A stretch of 64,000 nucleotides of DNA from Podarcis filfolensis. Taxonomy: Eukaryota. The position numbers were made by a program, and so were the translations under genes. The stretch lies in assembly GCA_964270895.1 (NCBI GenBank), contig OZ185441.1; one strand, given 5' to 3'. Below, in pieces: positions 16,322 through 59,359 of the stretch (positions are counted from its first letter, which is position 1; each line of letters begins with the position of its first letter). The notes beneath the pieces were generated by a model. That model was not told where the DNA came from and ran no database searches. It worked only from the letters and a program-made list of their open reading frames with translations.

Positions 16322-16420
16322 TTTCAGACAGGGGCCTTTCCCAATCTAATCTGGAGATGCCAGGGATTAAACCCGAGACCTTTCATGCAAAGCAGATGTG
16401 CTATCGCTGAGCTATGACCC
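16322..16420 (-). mobile_element. tRNA-derived SINE head (Squam2-like), degraded
   Basis: On minus: A-box-like TAGCTCAGCGATAG and B-box-like GGTTTAATCCC, similar to the copy at 17338. Confidence 0.6.
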
Positions 16421-16774
16421 TTCATCAAAGTGGGAGGAGGAGGAGGCCTATTCTGTTCCTTGGCAGCAAATGAATCACACTTCTTCCAGGCTTCCTGTAG
16501 ATCTGGCTGGCCCATTGTGAAAACAAGATGCCGAGGTGTATGGACCTTTGGCCTGATCCAGTGACACCCTTCTTACATTCACGTTACATTTAGGAAAAAG
16601 AGACGTACCTGAACTCAACAGACACAACACGTATTGTGATGGTGCATATTCATCTGCCCTAAGAGAGCCCCCATATTCATTCTGAATTTGTATTCAGACT
16701 TTACTAACAATTCTAGTCAAGGCCAAGGTTGGACACATGCAGATTTATTTATTTAGCCCTATCTGTATTGCTTT

Positions 16775-17139
16775 CTAGGTTGGCAGGAGCAGGGACCGAG
16801 CAGTGGGAGCTCACCCCGTTGCAGGGATTCGAACCGCTGACCTTCTGATCAGCAAGCCCTAGGCTCTGTGGTTTAACCCACAGCGCCACCCGCGTCCCAA
16901 CCTAGCAGTTCGAAAGCACATCAAAGTGCAAGTAGATAAATAGGTACTGCTCCAGCGGGAAGGTAAACGGTATTTCCATGCGCTGTTCTTGTTCACCAGA
17001 AGTGGCTTAGTCATGCTAGCCACATGACCCAGAAGCTGTACGCCAGCTCCCTCGGCCAGTAAAGCAAGATGAGTGCCGCAACCCCAGAGTTGGTCATGAC
17101 TGGACCTAATGGTCAGGGGTCCCTTTACCTTTACCTTTA
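16775..17139. mobile_element. Sauria SINE with inverted 5' segment (16775-16898 minus; 16897-17139 plus)
   Basis: Both parts match the intact Sauria SINE copies in this window. (TTTACC)n tail; TSD TATTG(C/G)TTTCT at 16766-16776 and 17140-17150. Confidence 0.9.
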
Positions 17140-17337
17140 TATTGGTTTCTGGTTCTTTCAATGATATTTTAGTTCTGTATTGTTTTGCACATAGAAGGTT
17201 GGGGGGCTTAGTTAAAAGACTTCCAGGCAGCAGTGCTGAGAAAGACCCAACCCAAGATCTTGGAGAGTTGCTGTGTATAAGAAGAGAAAGCACTCAGCTA
17301 CATGAACTAATGCAGAAAAAGGCAACTCCATACATTG

Positions 17338-17532
17338 GGGAGAGGCTGTGGCTCAGTGGAAGAGCATCTGATTTTCCTGCAGAAGGTCCCAGGTTCAATC
17401 CCTGATATCTCTTGGTAGAACTGAGAGAGAGCCTTGTATGAATTCCTAGAGAGACACTGTCAGTCACCATAGACAATATTGAACTGGATGGATGGCATTT
17501 CTGAGCCAGAATAAGGCAGCTTCCTATGTTCC
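17338..17532 (+). mobile_element. tRNA-derived SINE (Squam2-like)
   Basis: A box TGGCTCAGTGG, B box GGTTCAATCCC, tail AAGGCAGCTTCCTATGTTCC. Family name is tentative. Confidence 0.7.
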
Positions 17533-27421: not shown

Positions 27422-28437
27422 ATATAGGCTGTTCACTTGAGAAAGACCACTACAGCAATAACTGGGTTGTGGCAGCTATAGGGAACAGAACATAAACAAA
27501 CAAACAAAACTGGCATATGTTGGGTGTGGCTGACTGAAACCAGGCCAAAGTTCTCTGTGCCAAAATATCTGCTCTAGGAAGTTATCAGTTTCTGCAAAGG
27601 ATGCAATCTGCATTTTAACAACAACAGTGTTGCCCTCCCATTCCACACAGAATCAGGAGGCATCTGAATAATAATATAAAAACCAGGACATATTAGAGAG
27701 ACATTATTCATGTTTACATGCTTCCTCTGGTTTTAAGGTAAAGTTCACATCTCCAAACAGTGTTGGCATCCCATAAATGTCTCCCCGCCTTGGAAGACTG
27801 ACTCCAATTCTTCCCTAGCGAAGTGAGAGCCAATGTCCCAAACAGCTGCTCCTTAGATCTGACCTGGGCAAGGCAGTCTATTTAATCCAGAGATGGTATC
27901 TTTAGGAAGGAAGCTCCTTTACACATTGGCAGACAACTTTAGAGCACGCATAAATAAGACAGCCCAAAGGGCAAGTCAACTCTCTGTGCCTCTGAAGGGC
28001 AAAATGTGAAAAAGAGAATAAAAAGAAAGAAAAAGAAAAGCTGTTTAGGATATAGCTTTGAAGAGTTATCCCTGGAACTTTCAGAGCTGCATAAAATATT
28101 TTCCAAGATCACTGAATGCTCCAAAGGTCAGCAACTGATATACTTCTCAAATTATCAGATAAAATGCGCCCAAGTTAAGAGCAGTGTTAGTTTCAAGGGC
28201 TGTCAGGAATAACTTCATAATGCATAGTGATTGCCACAAAACCCTACATGCATTTAAAGCTCTACTGCATGGTGACCTTAAAATACTGAGAAACCTCAAG
28301 TATAAATGTTTGATATAAGTCTCCACCACCTGCTCTTTCAGCCTATAAGAATGTTGTTATTTAAGCAGCTCTGAAACCCATTTTCTATATAGAAACCTTG
28401 AAAAGTTGTACTGGGGGAGTAGATTTGAAGATAAATA

Positions 28438-28793
28438 AAGGTAAAGGTAAAGGGACCCCTGACCATTAGGTCCAGTCGTGGACGACTCTGGGGTTGCGGC
28501 GCTCATCTCACTTTACTGGCCAAGGGAGCCGGCGTATAATTTCCGGGTCATGTGGCCAGCATGACTAAGCCGCTTCTGGCGAACCACAGCAGCACACAGA
28601 AATGCTGTTTACCTTCCCGCCAGAGCGGTACCTATTTATCTACTTGCACTTTGATGTGCTTTTGAACTGCTGGGTGGGTAGGAGCAGGGACCCGGCAATG
28701 GGAGCTCACCCCGTCATGGGGATTTGAACCGCCAACCTTCTTATCAGCAAGCCCTAGGCTCTGTGGTTTCACCCACAGCACCACCCACATCCC
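28438..28793 (-). mobile_element. Sauria SINE, full length
   Basis: tRNA-like head with A and B boxes, Bov-B-like 3' end, (TTTACC)n tail; 13-bp TSD TTGAAGATAAATA (28425-28437 and 28796-28808). Confidence 0.95.
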
Positions 28794-29888
28794 TATTGAA
28801 GATAAATAGTGGTGAGCAATAGAAGGAAGGAAGGAAGGAAGGAAGGAAAAAATAAATATAGATCAGGTAAATATTGAAACAGACAGGAGAGAGTACTGTA
28901 AAACTTTGGAACAGTGCAATTTTAAAGTGTTCTACTAACTAATATCTCCCCAGGTTTGTTATCAAATTTGTTGCCCAACTTGTGTCTGTTTTGGCGAGGA
29001 TCTAGTTAGAAACTGAAACAAGCATCACTATTAATCTGGAGCAATTATGAGCGTTTTACAGAATCGACCTTCCCCAGGGCCCAGTATTTTTGCAAAGCTG
29101 CTGCTGCTGGCTGCAATCCAGAATTTCAGGTAGGCTATCCTATTTGTTGCAGCAAGGAAGAAGCACTGTGCAAGAACAAGCAAGCTTTCCCCAACACTGC
29201 AGAAAAACAGATACATCTTTCAAAACAAAAAAATTTTTTTCTGCCAGTAGCACCTTAAAGACCAACTAAGTTAGTTCTTGGTATGAGCTTTCGTGTGCAT
29301 GCACACTTCTTCAGATACACTGAAACAGAAGTACAGTAAATAAGAGTGGGACGAGATCAATGCATAGGTTTAAATGTTTCCCAATTAAAAGCTTTAATCT
29401 TGTCCAGCAAAACCCAGGCAAAATAGACTTTTTTTGGCAAGAGGATTCATAAGGATGGCTTTGTCTCAAGCTTTGTTGAAAACCTATGTATGCTTTCTTA
29501 GAAAACATCATATGGCACAGCTCTCTTAAAATACGCCACGAGAATCCAGGTGGCGAATAGCATGTTTGAATGTTCTCTCAAAAATCATAACATTAAGCAT
29601 GTATGTATGTATGTATGAACCTTGCAACTCAAGAGTTCTCATAGTCTTCAGCCTTGTCAACAATGTCTCATGATCCCTTGGTTGTTAGGTATGGCATCTG
29701 GGAGCTACGAGAGAGCAAAGTGCCCACTAGCAGTTTAAAAATAGAACGAAGAAGACACCATCTGCTAAAGGTGAGTGACCCCACAACAGTGGCAAATTTC
29801 AATGTGTAAACCTCCCTCCCCTGCCACAATGGGATAAACCTTCCCCTGCTTCACTGCTTATGAACAGGGCCACAAAATGCAGAGGGCC

Positions 29889-30407
29889 CTCTCTAGGTGT
29901 ACCCATTGTTTTGTCTCATCTTCTAGTATATATGGGATAATATGGCGTATTTGGTTGGCAATGTAATATGCTTCTATGTTGGGGATTCCCCATCCTCCTT
30001 CTGAGGTGGGGATGTGCAGGTATTTGGGGCTTATTCTTGGCCACCAACAGCATACAAATCAATATGGCCAACCTGATCCAAAACACCCACCCACCCCACT
30101 CACACACAAAAGCAAAGATCACCACAGCCAATCACAAACAAACAACCGCACCCTAGGCCAACCCCAACCTCTCTCACCACCAAAGAAACACAAATGAACA
30201 GCACGAGCAGCGCTGACACCAAACCCTACATACATTAAGCAAAATAGAAACATCGGCACCCGACCCCACCCCCACCCATCTTCCCCCCCCCCCACCCCTA
30301 ATGTCTCAACAAATGAAACTGATTTGTAAAAATGTTACATGGAAAAAATACGAGAGACATTACACATACTTCTTTAAGACAAGAAAATCTTTAATTAAAA
30401 AAAAATA
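29889..30407. mobile_element. L1 insertion: inverted ORF2 fragment (29889-30042, minus) plus forward ORF2 end, 3'UTR and poly(A)
   Basis: 15-bp TSD AAAATGCAGAGGGCC (29874-29888 and 30408-30422). A-rich tail preceded by ATTAAA. Minus frame 30040-29891 reads PRISPKYLHIPTSEGGWGIPNIEAYYIANQIRHIIPYILEDETKQWVHLE, matching the L1 post-RT motif PRI...P...GG(L/W)G(L/I)PN...YY.A.Q. Confidence 0.85.
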
Positions 30408-31879
30408 AAAATGCAGAGGGCCATTTTGGTCCAGCCAGTAGACCCACATTCAAATGCACGTCCACACCAGCAACAGATGTGCAAGAAGATGCTGACTGCC
30501 ATCTGCAGATATCCCTTGTTGGACCCTAGCAGCTCATACATACACCATTTATTCATCACATTAGCAGTTGCCTCTATTTGTCCTCTGCATTTGATTAGTA
30601 AAATATACACTGGTGCTTTAGGGATAGTGAGTTCTCCCAGGGAGAATGTCAGGGACAAGCCTAGAGACAAGTCTGATGACTGATAGTTTTCTATGATTTA
30701 GTGTGACCGCAAAGCGCCGACCTACCACTGTTATTAATGAAAATAAATAATTCGGGGCTGGATGGCCCATTGTGACAAGGCTCTCCATCAAAGCCTGGGA
30801 AACATTTTGAGAAACTAAAGAAATGTGATGATGCCCCCCCCCCAAAGCAAGATAGGCTGATTCTCTTTTCTAATGGCCCTTTGATGCTTCCACTTGCGTG
30901 TATTTATTTTATCATTGCCAAATAAGTAATCTCTCAATTCTGACCAATCCTTAGCATTTCTACGCTGGGGATCCCTTGACTTTTGTTGTGGGCACTTGGA
31001 ATATCTCTGTGGGTTACCAGAATGTGGATGAATAAAGCTCTTAACGAAATTCAGCCACATGAATAGGAGAAAGATGTTTTTAATGCCCAAAGCAGCCAAC
31101 TATTTTTATTTTTGGACACAAAGTGCATTGCTTTTGAGACAATTTTCATTGCTAAATAAAATCCCGCTTCCAGCCTGACTCTGTTCTTGGCCGCAGGTGT
31201 AAGAATCCCAAAACAGAGTGTAGGGAAGTTGAATTTCTCACCCACTCACAGCGACTGCTTTGTAACCACCATTGGTTCTGCTGTGGGTAAATTCCTTCCC
31301 AGACTCTGGGCAATACTGCTCTGTCATACAAAGAGCATTTTAGCCCAGGGGCAGACACACGCTTTGCATTCAAAAAAAAGTGCCTGGTTCTGTCTCTAAC
31401 ATTTCCAGCTTAAAGGACTAAGTGATGAAAAATAGGGCTGTGTAGCCAGTTTGGTCAAAGCTCAAGTACTGACCCAAATCTGCCTGATTTGGGTGTATCA
31501 GGGCTTCAGCCAGATCAGATTGAGACTACACAGGCTTGACCAACCAAGAGCAACCCACAGCATTTTAAAATCTGTCTCATGGCTTTCCCTCGTCACCAGC
31601 CACAAGTTTCCCAAAACACTACTTCCCCTGGTCATTCTGGCTTAGAGACAAAGTGGGTGGCTAACCAACCATAAGGATGGAAGGATCTGTCAATGTCACT
31701 TCTCTCCATTTCTCATCAACCCAATCTTAAATACAGCTCTCCACATTTTCCAGCAATTTATACCTATATCTATATAAATCCGCATGAAATTTCACCAGCA
31801 TTGTAATGTGAATGCCTCCAAATTTTAAATGCTGTTTTGAGTAATGCACACATTTCACAAGCAATTTCCTCTAATAGAA

Positions 31880-32103: not shown

Positions 32104-32249
32104 AAAAATAGACTTTTATATGTTCTTTTCAATAATATCTTCATTTTTATGCATGCTTGCTAAATGATGTTTGTTGGGGGGACTGTGAATTTCAAAGGAA
32201 AGATGTGTTTCAATTTTCATATTGTTTTGGAAAGTGTGAATCTGATATA

Positions 32250-32605
32250 AAGGTAAAGGTAAAGGGACCCCTGACCATTAGGTCCAGTCGTGGCCGACTC
32301 TGGGGTTGCGGCGCTCATCTTGCTTTATTGGCCGAGGGAGCCGGCGTACAGCTTCCGGGTCATGTGGCCAGCATGACCAAGCCGCTTCTGGCGAACCAGA
32401 GCAGTGTACGGAAATGCCGTTTACCTTTATGCAGGAGCGGTACCTATTTATCTACTTGCACTTTGACGTGCTTTCGAACTGCTAGGTTGGCAGGAGCAGG
32501 GACCGAGCAACAGGAGCTCACCCCATCGCAGGGATTCGAACCGCCGACCTTCTGATCGGCAAGTCCTAGGCTCTGTGGTTTAACCCACAGCACCACCCGC
32601 GTCCC
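32250..32605 (-). mobile_element. Sauria SINE, full length
   Basis: A and B boxes, tail, and 15-bp TSD TGTGAATCTGATATA (32235-32249 and 32607-32621). Confidence 0.95.
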
Positions 32606-45624: not shown

Positions 45625-46220
45625 GGTATTCAGAACCATTATTGCCTCCAACTGTGTATGCAGGGCACAGCCGTCATGGCTAGCAGCCATCAATAGCCCC
45701 CTGTCCTCCCATCAATTTGTCCAATCCTCTTTTAAAGCCATGGAAGCTGCTGGCCATTGTTGCTTCCTGCAGCAGTGAGTTCCATAGTTTAATTATACAC
45801 TATGTGTAGAAGGGGACGCAGGTAGCGCTGTGGTCTAAACCACCGAGCCTAGGGCTTGCCGATCAGAAGGTCAGCGGTTCGAATCCCCGCGATGGGGTGA
45901 GCTCCCGTTGCTCAGTCCCAGCTCCTGCCTACCTAGCAGTTCGAAGGCACGTCAAAGTGCAAGTAGATAAATAGGTACCGCTCCGGCGGGAAGGTAAACG
46001 GTGTTCCCATGCGCTGCTCTGGTTCACCAGAAGCGGCTTAGTCATGCTGGCCACATGACACGGAAGCTGTCTGCGGACAAACGCCGGCTCCCTTGGCCTA
46101 TAGAGTGAGACGAGCGCGCAATCCCAGAGTCATCCGCAACTGGACCTAATGGTCAGGGGTATCTTTACCTTTAAATATGTGTAGAAGTACTTTCCTTTAT
46201 CAGTTCTTGAACCTTCCAAC
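45625..46220 (-). mobile_element. Old CR1 3' fragment interrupted by a Sauria SINE
   Basis: TCCAATCCTCTTTTAAAGCCAT...AGTGAGTTCCATAGTTTAATTA...TATGTG continues after the SINE as TAGAAGTACTTTCCTTTATC. Confidence 0.55.
45813..46175 (+). mobile_element. Sauria SINE, full length, distinct subfamily
   Basis: 12-bp TSD TATGTGTAGAAG (45801-45812 and 46176-46187); diagnostic differences TGGTCTAAACCACCGAG and an extra CTGCGGACAAA segment. Confidence 0.95.

Positions 46221-48687: not shown

Positions 48688-48740
<53 letters not shown>
48688..48740. repeat. (TG)n(GA)n microsatellite
   Basis: Seen directly. Confidence 0.95.
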
Positions 48741-48743
<3 letters not shown>

Positions 48744-48754
48744 AGATACTTTAT

Positions 48755-49253
48755 TTGTTGTTGTTTAGTCGTTTAGTCGTGTCCGACTCTTCGTGACCCC
48801 ATGGACCAGAGCACGCCAGGCACTCCTGTCTTCCACTGCCTCCCGCAGTTTGGTCAGGCTCATGTTTGTAGCTTCAAGAACACTATCCAACCATCTCGTC
48901 CTCCGTTGTCCCCTTCTCCTTGTGCCCTCCATCTTTCCCAACATCAGGGTCTTTTCCAGGAAGTCTTCTCTTCTCCTGAGGTGGCCAAAGTATTGGAGCC
49001 TCAGCTTCACGATCTGTCCTTCCAGGGAGCACTCAGGGCTGATTTCCTTAAGAATGGATAGGTTTGATCTTCTTGCAGTCCATGAGACTCTCAAGAGTCT
49101 CTTCCAGCACCATAATTCAAAAGCATCAATTCTTTGGCGATCAGCCTTCTTTATGGTCCAGCTCTCACTTCCATACATCACTACTGGGAAAACCTATGGT
49201 TTTCCCAGTAGTGATGTATGGAAGTGAGAGCTGGACCATAAAGAAGGCTGATC
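48755..49253 (-). mobile_element. Bov-B 3' fragment with a fold-back inverted duplication at its 5' end
   Basis: Minus frame matches the RT C-terminus (MYGSESWTIKKADRQRIDAFELWCW...). 49139-49194 is the exact reverse complement of 49198-49253. Confidence 0.93.
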
Positions 49254-57973: not shown

Positions 57974-58337
57974 GGGACGCGGGTGGCGCTGTGGGTTAAA
58001 CCACAGAGCCTAGGACTTGCTGATCAGAAGGTTGGTGGTTCGAATCCCTGCGACGGGGTGAGCTCCTGTTGCTTGGTCCCTGCTCCTGCCAACCTAGCAG
58101 TTCGAAAAGCAGATAAATAGTGCAAGTCAAAGTGCAAGTAGATAAATAGGTACCGCTCCAGCGGGAAGGTAAATGGCGTTTCCATGCGCTGCTCTGGTTC
58201 GCCAGAAGCGGCTTAGTCATGCTGGCTACATGACCTGGAAGCTGTACGCAGGCTCCCTCGGCCAATAAAGCAAGATGAGCGCCACAACCCCAGAGTCGGC
58301 CACGACTGGACCTAATGGTCAGGGGTCCCTTTCCCTT
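57974..58337 (+). mobile_element. Sauria SINE, full length, with a small internal templated insertion
   Basis: 14-bp TSD TAGAGTGCTCTCTA (57960-57973 and 58338-58351); A and B boxes intact. Confidence 0.95.
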
Positions 58338-59359
58338 TAGAGTGCTCTCTAGGCTCAATGTCCAGTACAGCGGAACTGGTCATGTTGCCCTAAACTAATC
58401 TCTGCCCTTTGTTCTCAGAGGATAGATCCAAGATGACCTCTTGCCTTGAGGTCCAGAGAAAGAATGTGAGGAGGAGCAGGAGTTCAGCCTACACTCGAGT
58501 AGGACCCTGGCAGAGACACATGCCCGACTGGCATGTTCCCTCCCTCTCTCTCTAGCATCAGACAGGCAAAGAGAAAAAGAACAAAGGACAATAGTCCCAC
58601 TTCACAGAACACAGTAACACAAACATCCTGTTTCTGTCACTTCCCACTCTGTGGAGTCAAAACAATCCTATGATAGACAACAATCCTATGACTGCAATCA
58701 CGGAGCAGGAATTCTAACATCAAGTTGCTCATTTGATCAGTGGAATAGCAGGGGGAAGCAGAGGGGCCAATGCCCCGGGTGCAGAATCTTGGGGGGCATA
58801 AACCCGGTGACCCCGGCCCCTGCAGAGATCCCCACACCCTGCCTGGCTCCAGCGGTGGGGAGGGGGTTGATGAGAACGGAGAGCACCCTCTGGCCCCACT
58901 AAGCACCAGACAGGGAGTGGGTGCTCGTCACCCTCTGCTCTCACCAGTAGCACCCCATGTGACCTGTCCCCCATGCCCACCCAACAGAGAAGGCTTGGCA
59001 AGCACGCTCTGACCCCACCTGGCATGTGTCCCACACACCCTCCTCAGGCACTGATGAGCAGCCCCTGCACTGGACACAACCTAAGATTTATCATCAAAGA
59101 GATAGAGAGAAGTCAGCAGACAGATAAAGTTAAAGGGATAGTATGGGAATCGCCCCCTACTCTATTTGAATTGCACCCAAACTGCCAACAATCTCAAATG
59201 CAAAGAACATCATTGTAATACTCTCATCAAGCAATTCATCCAACAGTTCATGATTAAGGGACCTAAGAATAAGTGTGTGGGTGGTTTTCAGAGGATGGTG
59301 CGTTTCCTATGACTCTGTTAGCTGCCCAGGGAATGTAAAGGTGAGGTATACATTATTTA

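What the first reader, a model, noticed from the sequence alone, without database searches (positions are those of the whole stretch)
16766..17154. Sauria SINE with a complete twin-priming signature
The layout is TSD, then the SINE's first ~124 nt in reverse (16775-16898, reaching the true 5' end GGGACGCG), then the body forward from CCAACCTAG to the tail (16897-17139), then TSD. The TSD is TATTG(C/G)TTTCT (10/11). The target continues CT-GGTT on the right, nearly identical to the start of the inverted piece (CTAGGTT), as expected for an internal primer. There is a CC microhomology at the inversion junction, and CCAACCTAG (9 nt) is present in both parts. Twin priming is established for mammalian L1. 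Sauria SINEs share their 3' end with Bov-B and are thought to use its RTE machinery, where to my recollection 5' inversions are not a recognised outcome.
Basis: partly seen in the sequence, partly recalled or inferred. Interest (0 to 1): 0.7.

Follow-up and report, generated by a model that had tools for sequence, protein, structure and literature searches.

The report
Sauria SINE inserted with inverted head
One copy of a lizard jumping element (a Sauria SINE) was inserted in a single event with its first 124 bases flipped. This is the "twin priming" accident well known for mammalian L1, seen here in an element copied by a different enzyme family (Bov-B/RTE).

Summary
- **Layout:** window 16775-16898 is the reverse complement of Sauria SINE positions 1-124. 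Window 16897-17139 is positions 116-end in the forward direction. The two pieces share 7-9 nt (CCAACCTAG) and a CC at the joint. There are no extra bases.
- **Target-site duplication:** one 11-nt repeat, TATTG(C/G)TTTCT, brackets the whole. Random position pairs reach this match at 9e-4.
- **Empty site:** contigs of two related organisms (about 4-5% diverged in the flanks) join 16763 directly to 17138. That removes exactly the insert plus one repeat copy, so the composite is one insertion. Only the length could be read, not the letters.
- **Left junction:** a contig from the window's own species confirms it.
- **Same age:** head and body have equal non-CpG divergence (2.9% each).
- **Machinery:** there is no poly(A). 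The (ACCTTT)n tail abuts the right repeat, and the target resembles the published Bov-B/Sauria site. This points to RTE-type integration, not L1.

Best reading, about 0.8: twin priming at integration.

Held papers report 5' inversions almost only for L1 (germline Alu 0.02%), and none links them to RTE, Bov-B or Sauria SINEs. Two key papers were not available.

The scan holds five other unchecked first-reader notes of the same geometry in this genome.

This is a clean new member of a known kind, of moderate interest.

The parts
16766..16776 (+). Left copy of the target-site duplication, TATTGCTTTCT. Its last two bases, CT, could equally belong to the inverted SINE piece (5'-junction microhomology).
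   Evidence: The contig of X15 (organism A) runs 16350-16801 across this junction (record 8).
16775..16898 (-). Sauria SINE positions 1-124 (tRNA-related head with the start of the body) in inverted orientation. It reaches the true 5' end GGGACGCGG. The B-box-like GGTTCGAATCC lies at 16825-16835 on the minus strand.
   Evidence: Alignment A1. blastn 92.7% over 123 nt on the minus strand.
16897..16898 (.). CC shared by the end of the inverted piece and the start of the forward piece (2-nt microhomology at the inversion joint).
16897..17139 (+). Sauria SINE positions 116-end in forward orientation, including the Bov-B-like 3' motif and the terminal CCCTTT(ACCTTT)2A at 17121-17139. Positions 116/118-124 (CCAACCTAG, 16897-16905) duplicate, in inverted form, 16775-16783.
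   Evidence: Alignment A1. blastn 90.7% over 246 nt. Inverted repeat I8. Bov-B motif.
17140..17150 (+). Right copy of the target-site duplication, TATTGGTTTCT.
   Evidence: The empty-site contigs of X9 and X11 rejoin the window at 17138.
16752..16765 (+). Target-site context upstream of the bottom-strand nick: TTT at -14..-12, and G immediately before the T that starts the repeat. This is compatible with the published 'Tn-TA' type site of Bov-B and Sauria SINEs.
   Evidence: printed context; PMC13295347, section 3.2-3.3.

Best explanation
This is a single Sauria SINE retroposition event, carried out by the Bov-B (RTE-clade) LINE machinery, that went through twin priming.

**Shown**
- A SINE in two pieces: positions 1-124 inverted and positions 116-end direct.
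- One 11-nt target-site duplication around both pieces.
- No filler bases and no poly(A).
- A precise empty site in two related organisms.

**Inferred**
1. The endonuclease nicked the bottom strand at ...ATCTG|TATTG.... The SINE RNA's (ACCUUU)n tail was used for ordinary target-primed reverse transcription, giving cDNA 1.
2. The top strand was cut 11 nt downstream before cDNA 1 was finished.
3. The freed top-strand 3' end (...TTTCT-3') paired with AG at positions 123-124 of the same, or a second, SINE RNA. It primed cDNA 2, which ran to the RNA's 5' end.
4. cDNA 1 ran on to about position 116-118, which is 7-9 nt past the second priming site.
5. After RNA removal, the two cDNA 3' ends paired through GG/CC. 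Host repair then filled in and ligated.

The Pol III promoter now points away from the body, so this copy was dead on arrival and is a neutral fossil.
For: **Geometry**
- The layout is exact, with no filler bases.
- The repeat is 10/11; random position pairs reach this at 9e-4.
- Its 11-nt length fits the 11-15 nt of the four normal copies. It also fits the RTE peak of 10-12 bp cited in PMC4245944.

**Empty site**
- X11 record 1 and X9 record 24 are single contigs that go from 16763 straight to 17138.
- That is 374 nt absent, equal to 363 nt of insert plus 11 nt of repeat.
- The flanks are unique and 4-5% diverged.

**Left junction**
- It is confirmed in X15, whose flank is 0.2% diverged. Record 8 covers 16350-16801.

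**Same age**
- Head and body differ from the local majority at 4/117 and 16/236 sites (Fisher p = 0.23).
- Non-CpG divergence is 2.9% in both.

**Fit to known twin priming**
- The 7-9 nt overlap lies inside the range reported for L1 twin priming: median 12 bp, quartiles 4-17 (PMC12016303).
- The microhomologies at the 5' junction (CT) and the inversion joint (CC) match the L1 pattern described in PMC2912911.

**RTE rather than L1 machinery**
- There is no poly(A), and the (ACCTTT)n tail abuts the right repeat.
- The repeat starts with T and has TTT upstream (PMC13295347).
- Normal copies share a 16-nt motif (15/16) with the 3' end of the Bov-B copy in this window; 0 of 1000 shuffles reach that score.

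**Mechanistic plausibility**
- PMC4245944 argues that a 10-20 nt overhang is what allows the second priming. RTE's 10-12 nt would qualify.
Against: - It is one locus, and both microhomologies are only 2 nt (1/16 each by chance).
- The inversion joint was not seen in independent reads.
- The letters of the empty site were not readable.
- That Bov-B reverse transcriptase made both cDNAs is inferred, not shown.
- A stringent-type LINE enzyme is thought to need its 3' tail to initiate. Internal initiation is therefore not expected a priori.
- In cell assays, 5' inversions were seen only with human L1 in human cells, plus one Nimb-2_DR insert (PMC4245944).
- Organism D's contig ends 2 nt after the left repeat, so its state is unknown.
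Confidence: 0.8

Rival explanations
1. Post-insertion inversion. A normal full-length SINE was inserted, and a later 124-bp inversion, with a 9-nt inverted duplication from staggered breaks or replication template switching, flipped its head.
For: The 9-nt inverted duplication (I8) is the kind of footprint that staggered-break inversions leave. The insertion is old enough for secondary events: about 5% diverged, with roughly a third of consensus CpG bases changed.
Against: - The left breakpoint would have to fall by chance within 0-2 nt of the repeat/SINE boundary.
- A normal SINE has no inverted repeat between positions 1-9 and 116-124 that could mediate this.
- Only one of the two breakpoints carries a duplication.
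- Inversions this small are rare.
- Five other first-reader notes of the same geometry in this genome (unchecked) would not be expected from random inversions.
Confidence: 0.07
2. Twin priming by L1 rather than Bov-B. The SINE RNA was mobilised in trans by a lizard L1, a clade for which 5' inversion is routine.
For: The scan notes several twin-primed L1 copies in this genome, one with a follow-up report (s1-333215). So L1 appears to twin-prime in this host.
Against: - There is no poly(A) or A-rich tail. The element ends in its own (ACCTTT)n directly at the repeat.
- The target ...CTG|TATTG... is not a TT|AAAA-type site. It does fit the Sauria/Bov-B signature.
- The 11-nt repeat fits the RTE peak.
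Confidence: 0.05
3. Two separate pieces were joined at a broken target. A 5'-truncated SINE insertion occurred, and an unrelated SINE cDNA fragment (positions 1-124) was captured by end joining, or a second independent insertion followed.
For: End-joining capture of stray cDNA at LINE-induced breaks is conceivable. The head shows fewer changes than the body (3.4% against 6.8%).
Against: - A head-only fragment lacks the 3' tail and cannot insert by target-primed reverse transcription.
- There is only one repeat and no filler.
- The two pieces meet within 9 nt of the same SINE coordinate.
- The divergence difference is not significant (p = 0.23), and non-CpG divergence is identical.
- Both pieces are absent together in E and F.
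Confidence: 0.05
4. Assembly artefact. The real locus holds a normal SINE, and the flip arose during assembly.
For: The inversion joint (16898/16899) was not bridged by any listed independent contig.
Against: - An independently built contig (X15 record 8) shows flank plus repeat followed by 25 nt of antisense SINE starting at position 124. A normal SINE cannot give that.
- The empty site differs from the filled site by exactly the assembled insert length.
Confidence: 0.02

Closest known systems
5'-inverted L1 insertions made by twin priming (Ostertag & Kazazian 2001; statistics in PMC2912911 and PMC12016303)
   Same: - One target-site duplication around the composite.
- An inverted 5' part next to the left repeat and a direct 3' part with the tail.
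- A short overlap of the two cDNAs: 7-9 nt here, median 12 bp in L1.
- Microhomology at the 5' junction and at the inversion joint.
- A dead-on-arrival copy.
   Different: - The element is a 360-nt Pol III SINE, not a 6-kb LINE.
- Initiation used an RTE-type (ACCTTT)n tail, not poly(A).
- The enzyme is inferred to be Bov-B (RTE clade, stringent 3'-tail recognition), not L1 ORF2p.
- The inverted cDNA reached the very 5' end of the RNA.
5'-inverted Alu insertions (1 of about 5,500 in PMC2912911; 1 of 5,936, or 0.02%, in PMC12016303)
   Same: A short tRNA/7SL-type SINE, mobilised in trans, with a twin-priming-type 5' inversion inside one target-site duplication. It is a very rare outcome.
   Different: Alu is driven by L1 and ends in poly(A). 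This SINE is driven by Bov-B. If the five other unchecked scan notes hold, the rate here would be nearer 0.1-0.2% of copies.
Normal Sauria SINE insertions with the Bov-B 'Tn-TA' insertion signature (PMC13295347; PMC6007223)
   Same: The same element, the same (ACCTTT)n end, a repeat of the usual length that starts with T, and TTT upstream of the nick.
   Different: The first 124 nt are inverted. Neither paper mentions inversions or twin priming.
Single 5'-inverted Nimb-2_DR (zebrafish LINE) insert in chicken DT40 cells (PMC4245944)
   Same: A 5' inversion outside L1, from a LINE whose target-site duplication is about 12 bp. This fits the authors' idea that a long 3' overhang permits second priming.
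   Different: That was an experimental insert of an autonomous LINE from a different family. This is a natural, fixed insertion of a non-autonomous RTE partner.

Membership tests
Sauria SINE | tRNA-related 5' head with Pol III boxes, followed by a tRNA-unrelated body | tested here: met
   The two pieces together align end to end with four normal copies in the window (blastn 91-93%). GGTTCGAATCC is present at 16825-16835 on the minus strand. ARAGORN does not call the head as a tRNA, as expected for a derived SINE head.
Sauria SINE | 3' region shared with the Bov-B LINE, and terminal (ACCTTT)n | tested here: met
   The motif AGAGTCGG.CACGACT matches the 3' end of the Bov-B copy at about 48771-48786 (minus strand) at 15/16 in normal copies and 13/16 in this copy. 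None of 1000 shuffles reaches the score. (ACCTTT)n is listed for the Sauria SINE in PMC6007223 and PMC13295347.
RTE/Bov-B-type target-primed insertion | Target-site duplication of about 10-12 bp; for Sauria SINEs its first base is T, with TTT about one helical turn upstream; no poly(A) | tested here: met
   The repeat is 11 nt and starts with T. TTT lies at -14..-12, slightly further than the published ~10. There is no poly(A) (PMC13295347; PMC4245944).
Twin-priming product (5'-inverted retroposon insertion) | One target-site duplication brackets both the inverted and the direct part; a precise empty site exists | tested here: met
   The repeat is 10/11, reached by chance at 9e-4. Contigs of organisms E and F skip exactly 374 nt.
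Twin-priming product (5'-inverted retroposon insertion) | The inverted part is the 5' portion, starts at an internal position next to the 5' repeat, and is contiguous with the direct part apart from a small gap or overlap | tested here: met
   Positions 124 down to 1 are inverted and positions 116 to the end are direct, an overlap of 7-9 nt. The L1 overlap has a median of 12 bp (PMC12016303).
Twin-priming product (5'-inverted retroposon insertion) | Microhomology between the top-strand primer and the RNA, and between the two cDNA ends | tested here: inconclusive
   CT and CC are 2 nt each, so each has a 1/16 chance probability. The longer CT(A)GGTT match requires a 15-nt repeat and a later 1-nt indel.
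Twin-priming product (5'-inverted retroposon insertion) | Two reverse-transcription starts on the RNA during one integration | not testable with these tools
   This needs a retrotransposition assay or in vitro target-primed reverse transcription with the Bov-B protein.
L1-mediated trans-mobilisation | Poly(A) tail at the 3' end and a TT|AAAA-type nick site | tested here: not met
   The element ends ...ACCTTTA|TATTG, and the nick context is ...ATCTG|TATTG.

The most novel reading that the evidence does not exclude
Twin priming may be a regular, if rare, outcome of RTE-clade (Bov-B) retrotransposition in lacertid lizards. It may affect the SINE partner at a rate about ten times that of human Alu.

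If so, three things would follow.
- Bov-B's second-strand cut can precede completion of the first cDNA.
- A 'stringent' LINE reverse transcriptase can start on an internal RNA site without its 3'-tail signal.
- A 10-12 nt overhang is enough for the second priming, as the model in PMC4245944 predicts.
Probability: 0.35. Interest if true: 0.6.

Novelty: new member of a known kind. Interest (0 to 1): 0.45.

Why it matters
5' inversion is treated in the held literature as close to an L1-specific outcome.
- It makes up about 18-31% of L1 insertions (PMC2912911, PMC12016303).
- It makes up 0.02% of germline Alu insertions (PMC12016303).
- It was absent for a zebrafish L2 element in cell assays (PMC4245944).

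A clean, empty-site-verified case in a Bov-B-driven SINE shows that the accident is not tied to L1 ORF2p or to poly(A) priming.

It also gives a natural test of one idea: that overhang length, seen as the length of the target-site duplication, decides whether the second DNA end can prime.

If the other scan notes hold up, lacertid genomes offer a countable set of such events. That set could be used to measure the timing of second-strand cleavage in RTE elements, the LINE clade best known for horizontal transfer.

For the lizard itself the copy is a neutral, dead-on-arrival fossil.

Tried and rejected
- **Read laying.** It could not show the inversion joint, because short-read contigs collapse inside the SINE and about 350,000 pieces were not listed. 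It could not show the letters of the empty site. Organism D stayed undecided because its contig ends at 16778.
- **The many 'opposite strands' joints** (16775->16906 and 16784->16897, both with 9 shared letters). These are normal SINE copies from elsewhere in the genome laid on this inverted copy. They are not evidence about this locus.
- **A second direct repeat,** TCTGTATTGCTTT (16762-16774) and TCTGTATTGTTTT (17174-17186), 12/13. I considered it as an alternative target-site duplication and rejected it. It lies 34 nt beyond the SINE end, and the empty-site contigs rejoin at 17138, not at 17174.
- **Subfamily diagnostics for head against body.** Four local copies are too few to define subfamilies; only the divergence comparison was possible.
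- **RNA fold of a normal copy.** The priming site (positions 116-124) is partly paired and partly open in the predicted structure. This says nothing about accessibility.
- **ARAGORN on the locus.** It finds no tRNA in the inverted head.
- **Literature.** Ostertag & Kazazian 2001, Ichiyanagi et al. 2007 and Ichiyanagi & Okada 2008 (the paper most likely to have looked at RTE 5' junctions) are not held. 'Not described for RTE' therefore rests only on the held library.

Full report
**1. What is in the sequence**

Reading 16500-17450 and aligning the locus with the four ordinary Sauria SINE copies in the window shows the following. Those copies lie at about 28435-28792 (minus strand), 32243-32604 (minus strand), 45814-46173 and 57975-58339.
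- 16775-16898 is the reverse complement of SINE positions 1-124. It ends at the element's true 5' end, GGGACGCGG.
- 16897-17139 is positions 116 to the end in forward orientation. It finishes with the family's CCCTTT(ACCTTT)2A.
- CCAACCTAG occurs in both pieces (inverted repeat I8).
- CC is shared at the joint, and CT is shared between the left flank repeat and the inverted piece.
- TATTGCTTTCT (16766-16776) and TATTGGTTTCT (17140-17150) bracket the whole.
- No base is unaccounted for.

The window holds only these five Sauria SINE copies.

**2. Is it more than chance?**

A 10/11 match at the two ends, with +-3 nt of slack, is reached by 177 of 200,000 random position pairs in this window. The four normal copies have repeats of 11-15 nt. 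The RTE clade is reported to peak at 10-12 bp (Ichiyanagi & Okada 2008, as cited in PMC4245944).

**3. Independent data**

Ten organisms' runs hold part of the stretch. The flanks are single-copy by depth.
- **Organism F:** in X11, one 575-nt contig (record 1) aligns 16354-16763 to its letters 1-393 and 17138-17310 to its letters 394-566.
- **Organism E:** in X9, one 838-nt contig (record 24) does the same.
- **What this means:** both contigs therefore lack exactly 374 nt. That equals 363 nt of insert plus one 11-nt repeat copy. This is a precise empty site. Their flanks differ from the window by about 4-5%.
- **Organism A:** in X15 (flank 0.2% different, so the window's species or a very close relative), a 698-nt contig (record 8) runs 16350-16801. 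It covers the flank, the repeat and 25 nt of antisense SINE starting at position 124. A normally oriented SINE could not give that junction.
- **Organism D:** the contig in X5 stops 2 nt after the left repeat, so its state is open.

Two things could not be checked. No listed contig bridges the inversion joint, and the empty site could be read only in length, not in letters.

**4. One event or two?**

Against the majority of the four local copies, the head differs at 4/117 sites and the body at 16/236 (Fisher p = 0.23). Non-CpG divergence is 2.9% in both.
- A head-only fragment has no 3' tail and cannot insert on its own by target-primed reverse transcription.
- There is a single repeat.
- Both pieces are missing together in E and F.

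So the composite is best read as one insertion. Its non-CpG divergence (about 3%) is similar to the per-lineage flank divergence from E and F. This suggests it was inserted not long after that split.

**5. Which machinery?**
- The element ends in its own (ACCTTT)n directly at the right repeat, without poly(A).
- The repeat begins with T and has TTT at -14..-12. [quoted passage not shown]
- Normal copies share AGAGTCGG.CACGACT (15/16) with the 3' end of a Bov-B copy in this window. None of 1000 shuffles reaches that score.
- An L1-type poly(A) tail and TT|AAAA site are absent.

The insertion is therefore RTE-type.

**6. Mechanism**

The layout is the one defined for twin priming (described in PMC2912911, and PMC4245944).
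1. The bottom-strand nick primes cDNA 1 from the tail.
2. The top strand, cut 11 nt downstream before cDNA 1 is complete, pairs through its 3' end (...CT) with AG at positions 123-124 of the RNA. It primes cDNA 2, which runs to the RNA's 5' end.
3. The two cDNA 3' ends pair through GG/CC and are filled in.

cDNA 1 passed the second priming site by 7-9 nt. Such overlaps are normal in L1 twin priming, with a median of 12 bp and quartiles of 4-17 (PMC12016303). A second SINE RNA serving as template for cDNA 2 would give the same product.

All of these steps are inferred. Only the product and the empty site are shown.

**7.

If the repeat is 11 nt, the GGTT to its right lies beyond the top-strand nick and was not part of the primer. 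Only CT is certain primer microhomology. The alternative is a 15-nt repeat, TATTGGTTTCTGGTT, priming on AACC(U)AG. That requires a substitution and a 1-nt insertion in the left copy afterwards. By my rough estimate (not computed), the two readings are about equally improbable. The letters of the empty site would help settle the repeat's true sequence.

**8. Rivals**
- **Later small inversion (0.07).** This needs a breakpoint exactly at the SINE's 5' end, and no inverted repeat is available to mediate it.
- **L1-driven event (0.05).** This is contradicted by the tail and the target site.
- **Two pieces joined at a broken target (0.05).** This is contradicted by the single repeat, the near-contiguity of the pieces and their equal age.
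- **Misassembly (0.02).** This is contradicted by the X15 junction contig and by the exact length of the empty site.

**9. What is known**
- PMC2912911 gives 5' inversion in 31% of L1 insertions and a single inverted Alu.
- PMC12016303 gives 18-22% for L1 and 0.02% (1 of 5,936) for germline Alu.
- In PMC4245944, 5' inversions arose only with human L1 in human cells plus one Nimb-2_DR insert, and never with ZfL2-1. The authors tie the ability to a 10-20 nt overhang.
- The two papers on RTE and Sauria insertion signatures do not mention inversions.
- No held paper contains both 'twin priming' and RTE, Bov-B or BovB other than in a reference list.
- Ostertag & Kazazian 2001 and Ichiyanagi & Okada 2008 were not available, so prior description cannot be excluded.

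**10. Earlier notes of this scan**

Five other first-reader notes describe twin-priming-type Sauria SINEs in the same genome: s1-268826, s1-314000, s1-314001, s1-320563 and s1-329773. One note describes a BovB case (s1-287853), and several describe L1 cases, one of which has a follow-up report. None of the Sauria notes has been checked, and I could not read those windows, so they are leads only.

If all six cases are real, a rough rate can be estimated. At about five copies per window over 624 windows, the rate would be around 0.2% of copies. That is about ten times the Alu figure.

**11. Verdict**

It is a well-documented new member of a known kind: a twin-priming product in an RTE-driven SINE, with a verified empty site. 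On its own it is of moderate interest. It would become more interesting if a genome-wide count shows that the outcome recurs.

Noticed in passing
window 49139-49253, with the Bov-B body 48752-49195 on the minus strand: A 5'-truncated Bov-B copy, whose 3' end ...AGAGTCGGACACGACTAAACGACTAAAC(AAC)n lies near 48770, carries at its 5' end a perfect 56-nt inverted copy of its own first 56 nt with a 3-nt loop. Unlike the SINE case, this is an inverted duplication, not an inversion. It looks like fold-back self-priming of the cDNA end or twin priming with complete overlap. Its target-site duplication was not resolved: a possible ATAA(A)GATA is offset by 9 nt of CTCCCTCTC. The scan already noted it as s1-328123.
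   Followed up: partly
window 17340-17414 (+): ARAGORN calls a tRNA-Glu(TTC)-like sequence 190 nt downstream of the SINE. Contig depth there is thousands of times that of the flanks in all four runs. It is therefore the head of another high-copy tRNA-derived SINE family, not a tRNA gene.
   Followed up: partly
window 16762-16774 and 17174-17186: A third copy of the target-like motif, TCTGTATTG(C/T)TTT (12/13), lies 34 nt beyond the right repeat. It was probably a short direct repeat already present in the target region. It is not the insertion's target-site duplication, because the empty-site contigs rejoin at 17138.
   Followed up: yes
window 58095-58125 and 46066-46080: Two of the normal Sauria SINE copies carry internal insertions relative to the others. 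One is a 14-nt partial duplication of the GCAAGTAGATAAATAG region in the 58k copy. The other is a 10-nt CTGCGGACAA insertion in the 45.8k copy.
   Followed up: no
window 16354-16763: The contigs of organisms E and F carry 21 gap positions relative to the window within the left flank, and they share several substitutions not seen in organism D. E and F therefore group together against D. Organism D's contig ends 2 nt after the left repeat, which could mean low coverage or a heterozygous filled/empty site.
   Followed up: no
window 48690-48750: A (CT)n(CA)n microsatellite lies directly downstream of the Bov-B (CAA)n tail on the minus strand.
   Followed up: no
window 29874-30422: The scan's index lists a first-reader note of an L1 insertion with an inverted ORF2 piece in this same window (s1-328106). 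I did not examine it. If real, both L1 and Bov-B partners show 5' inversions within 15 kb.
   Followed up: no
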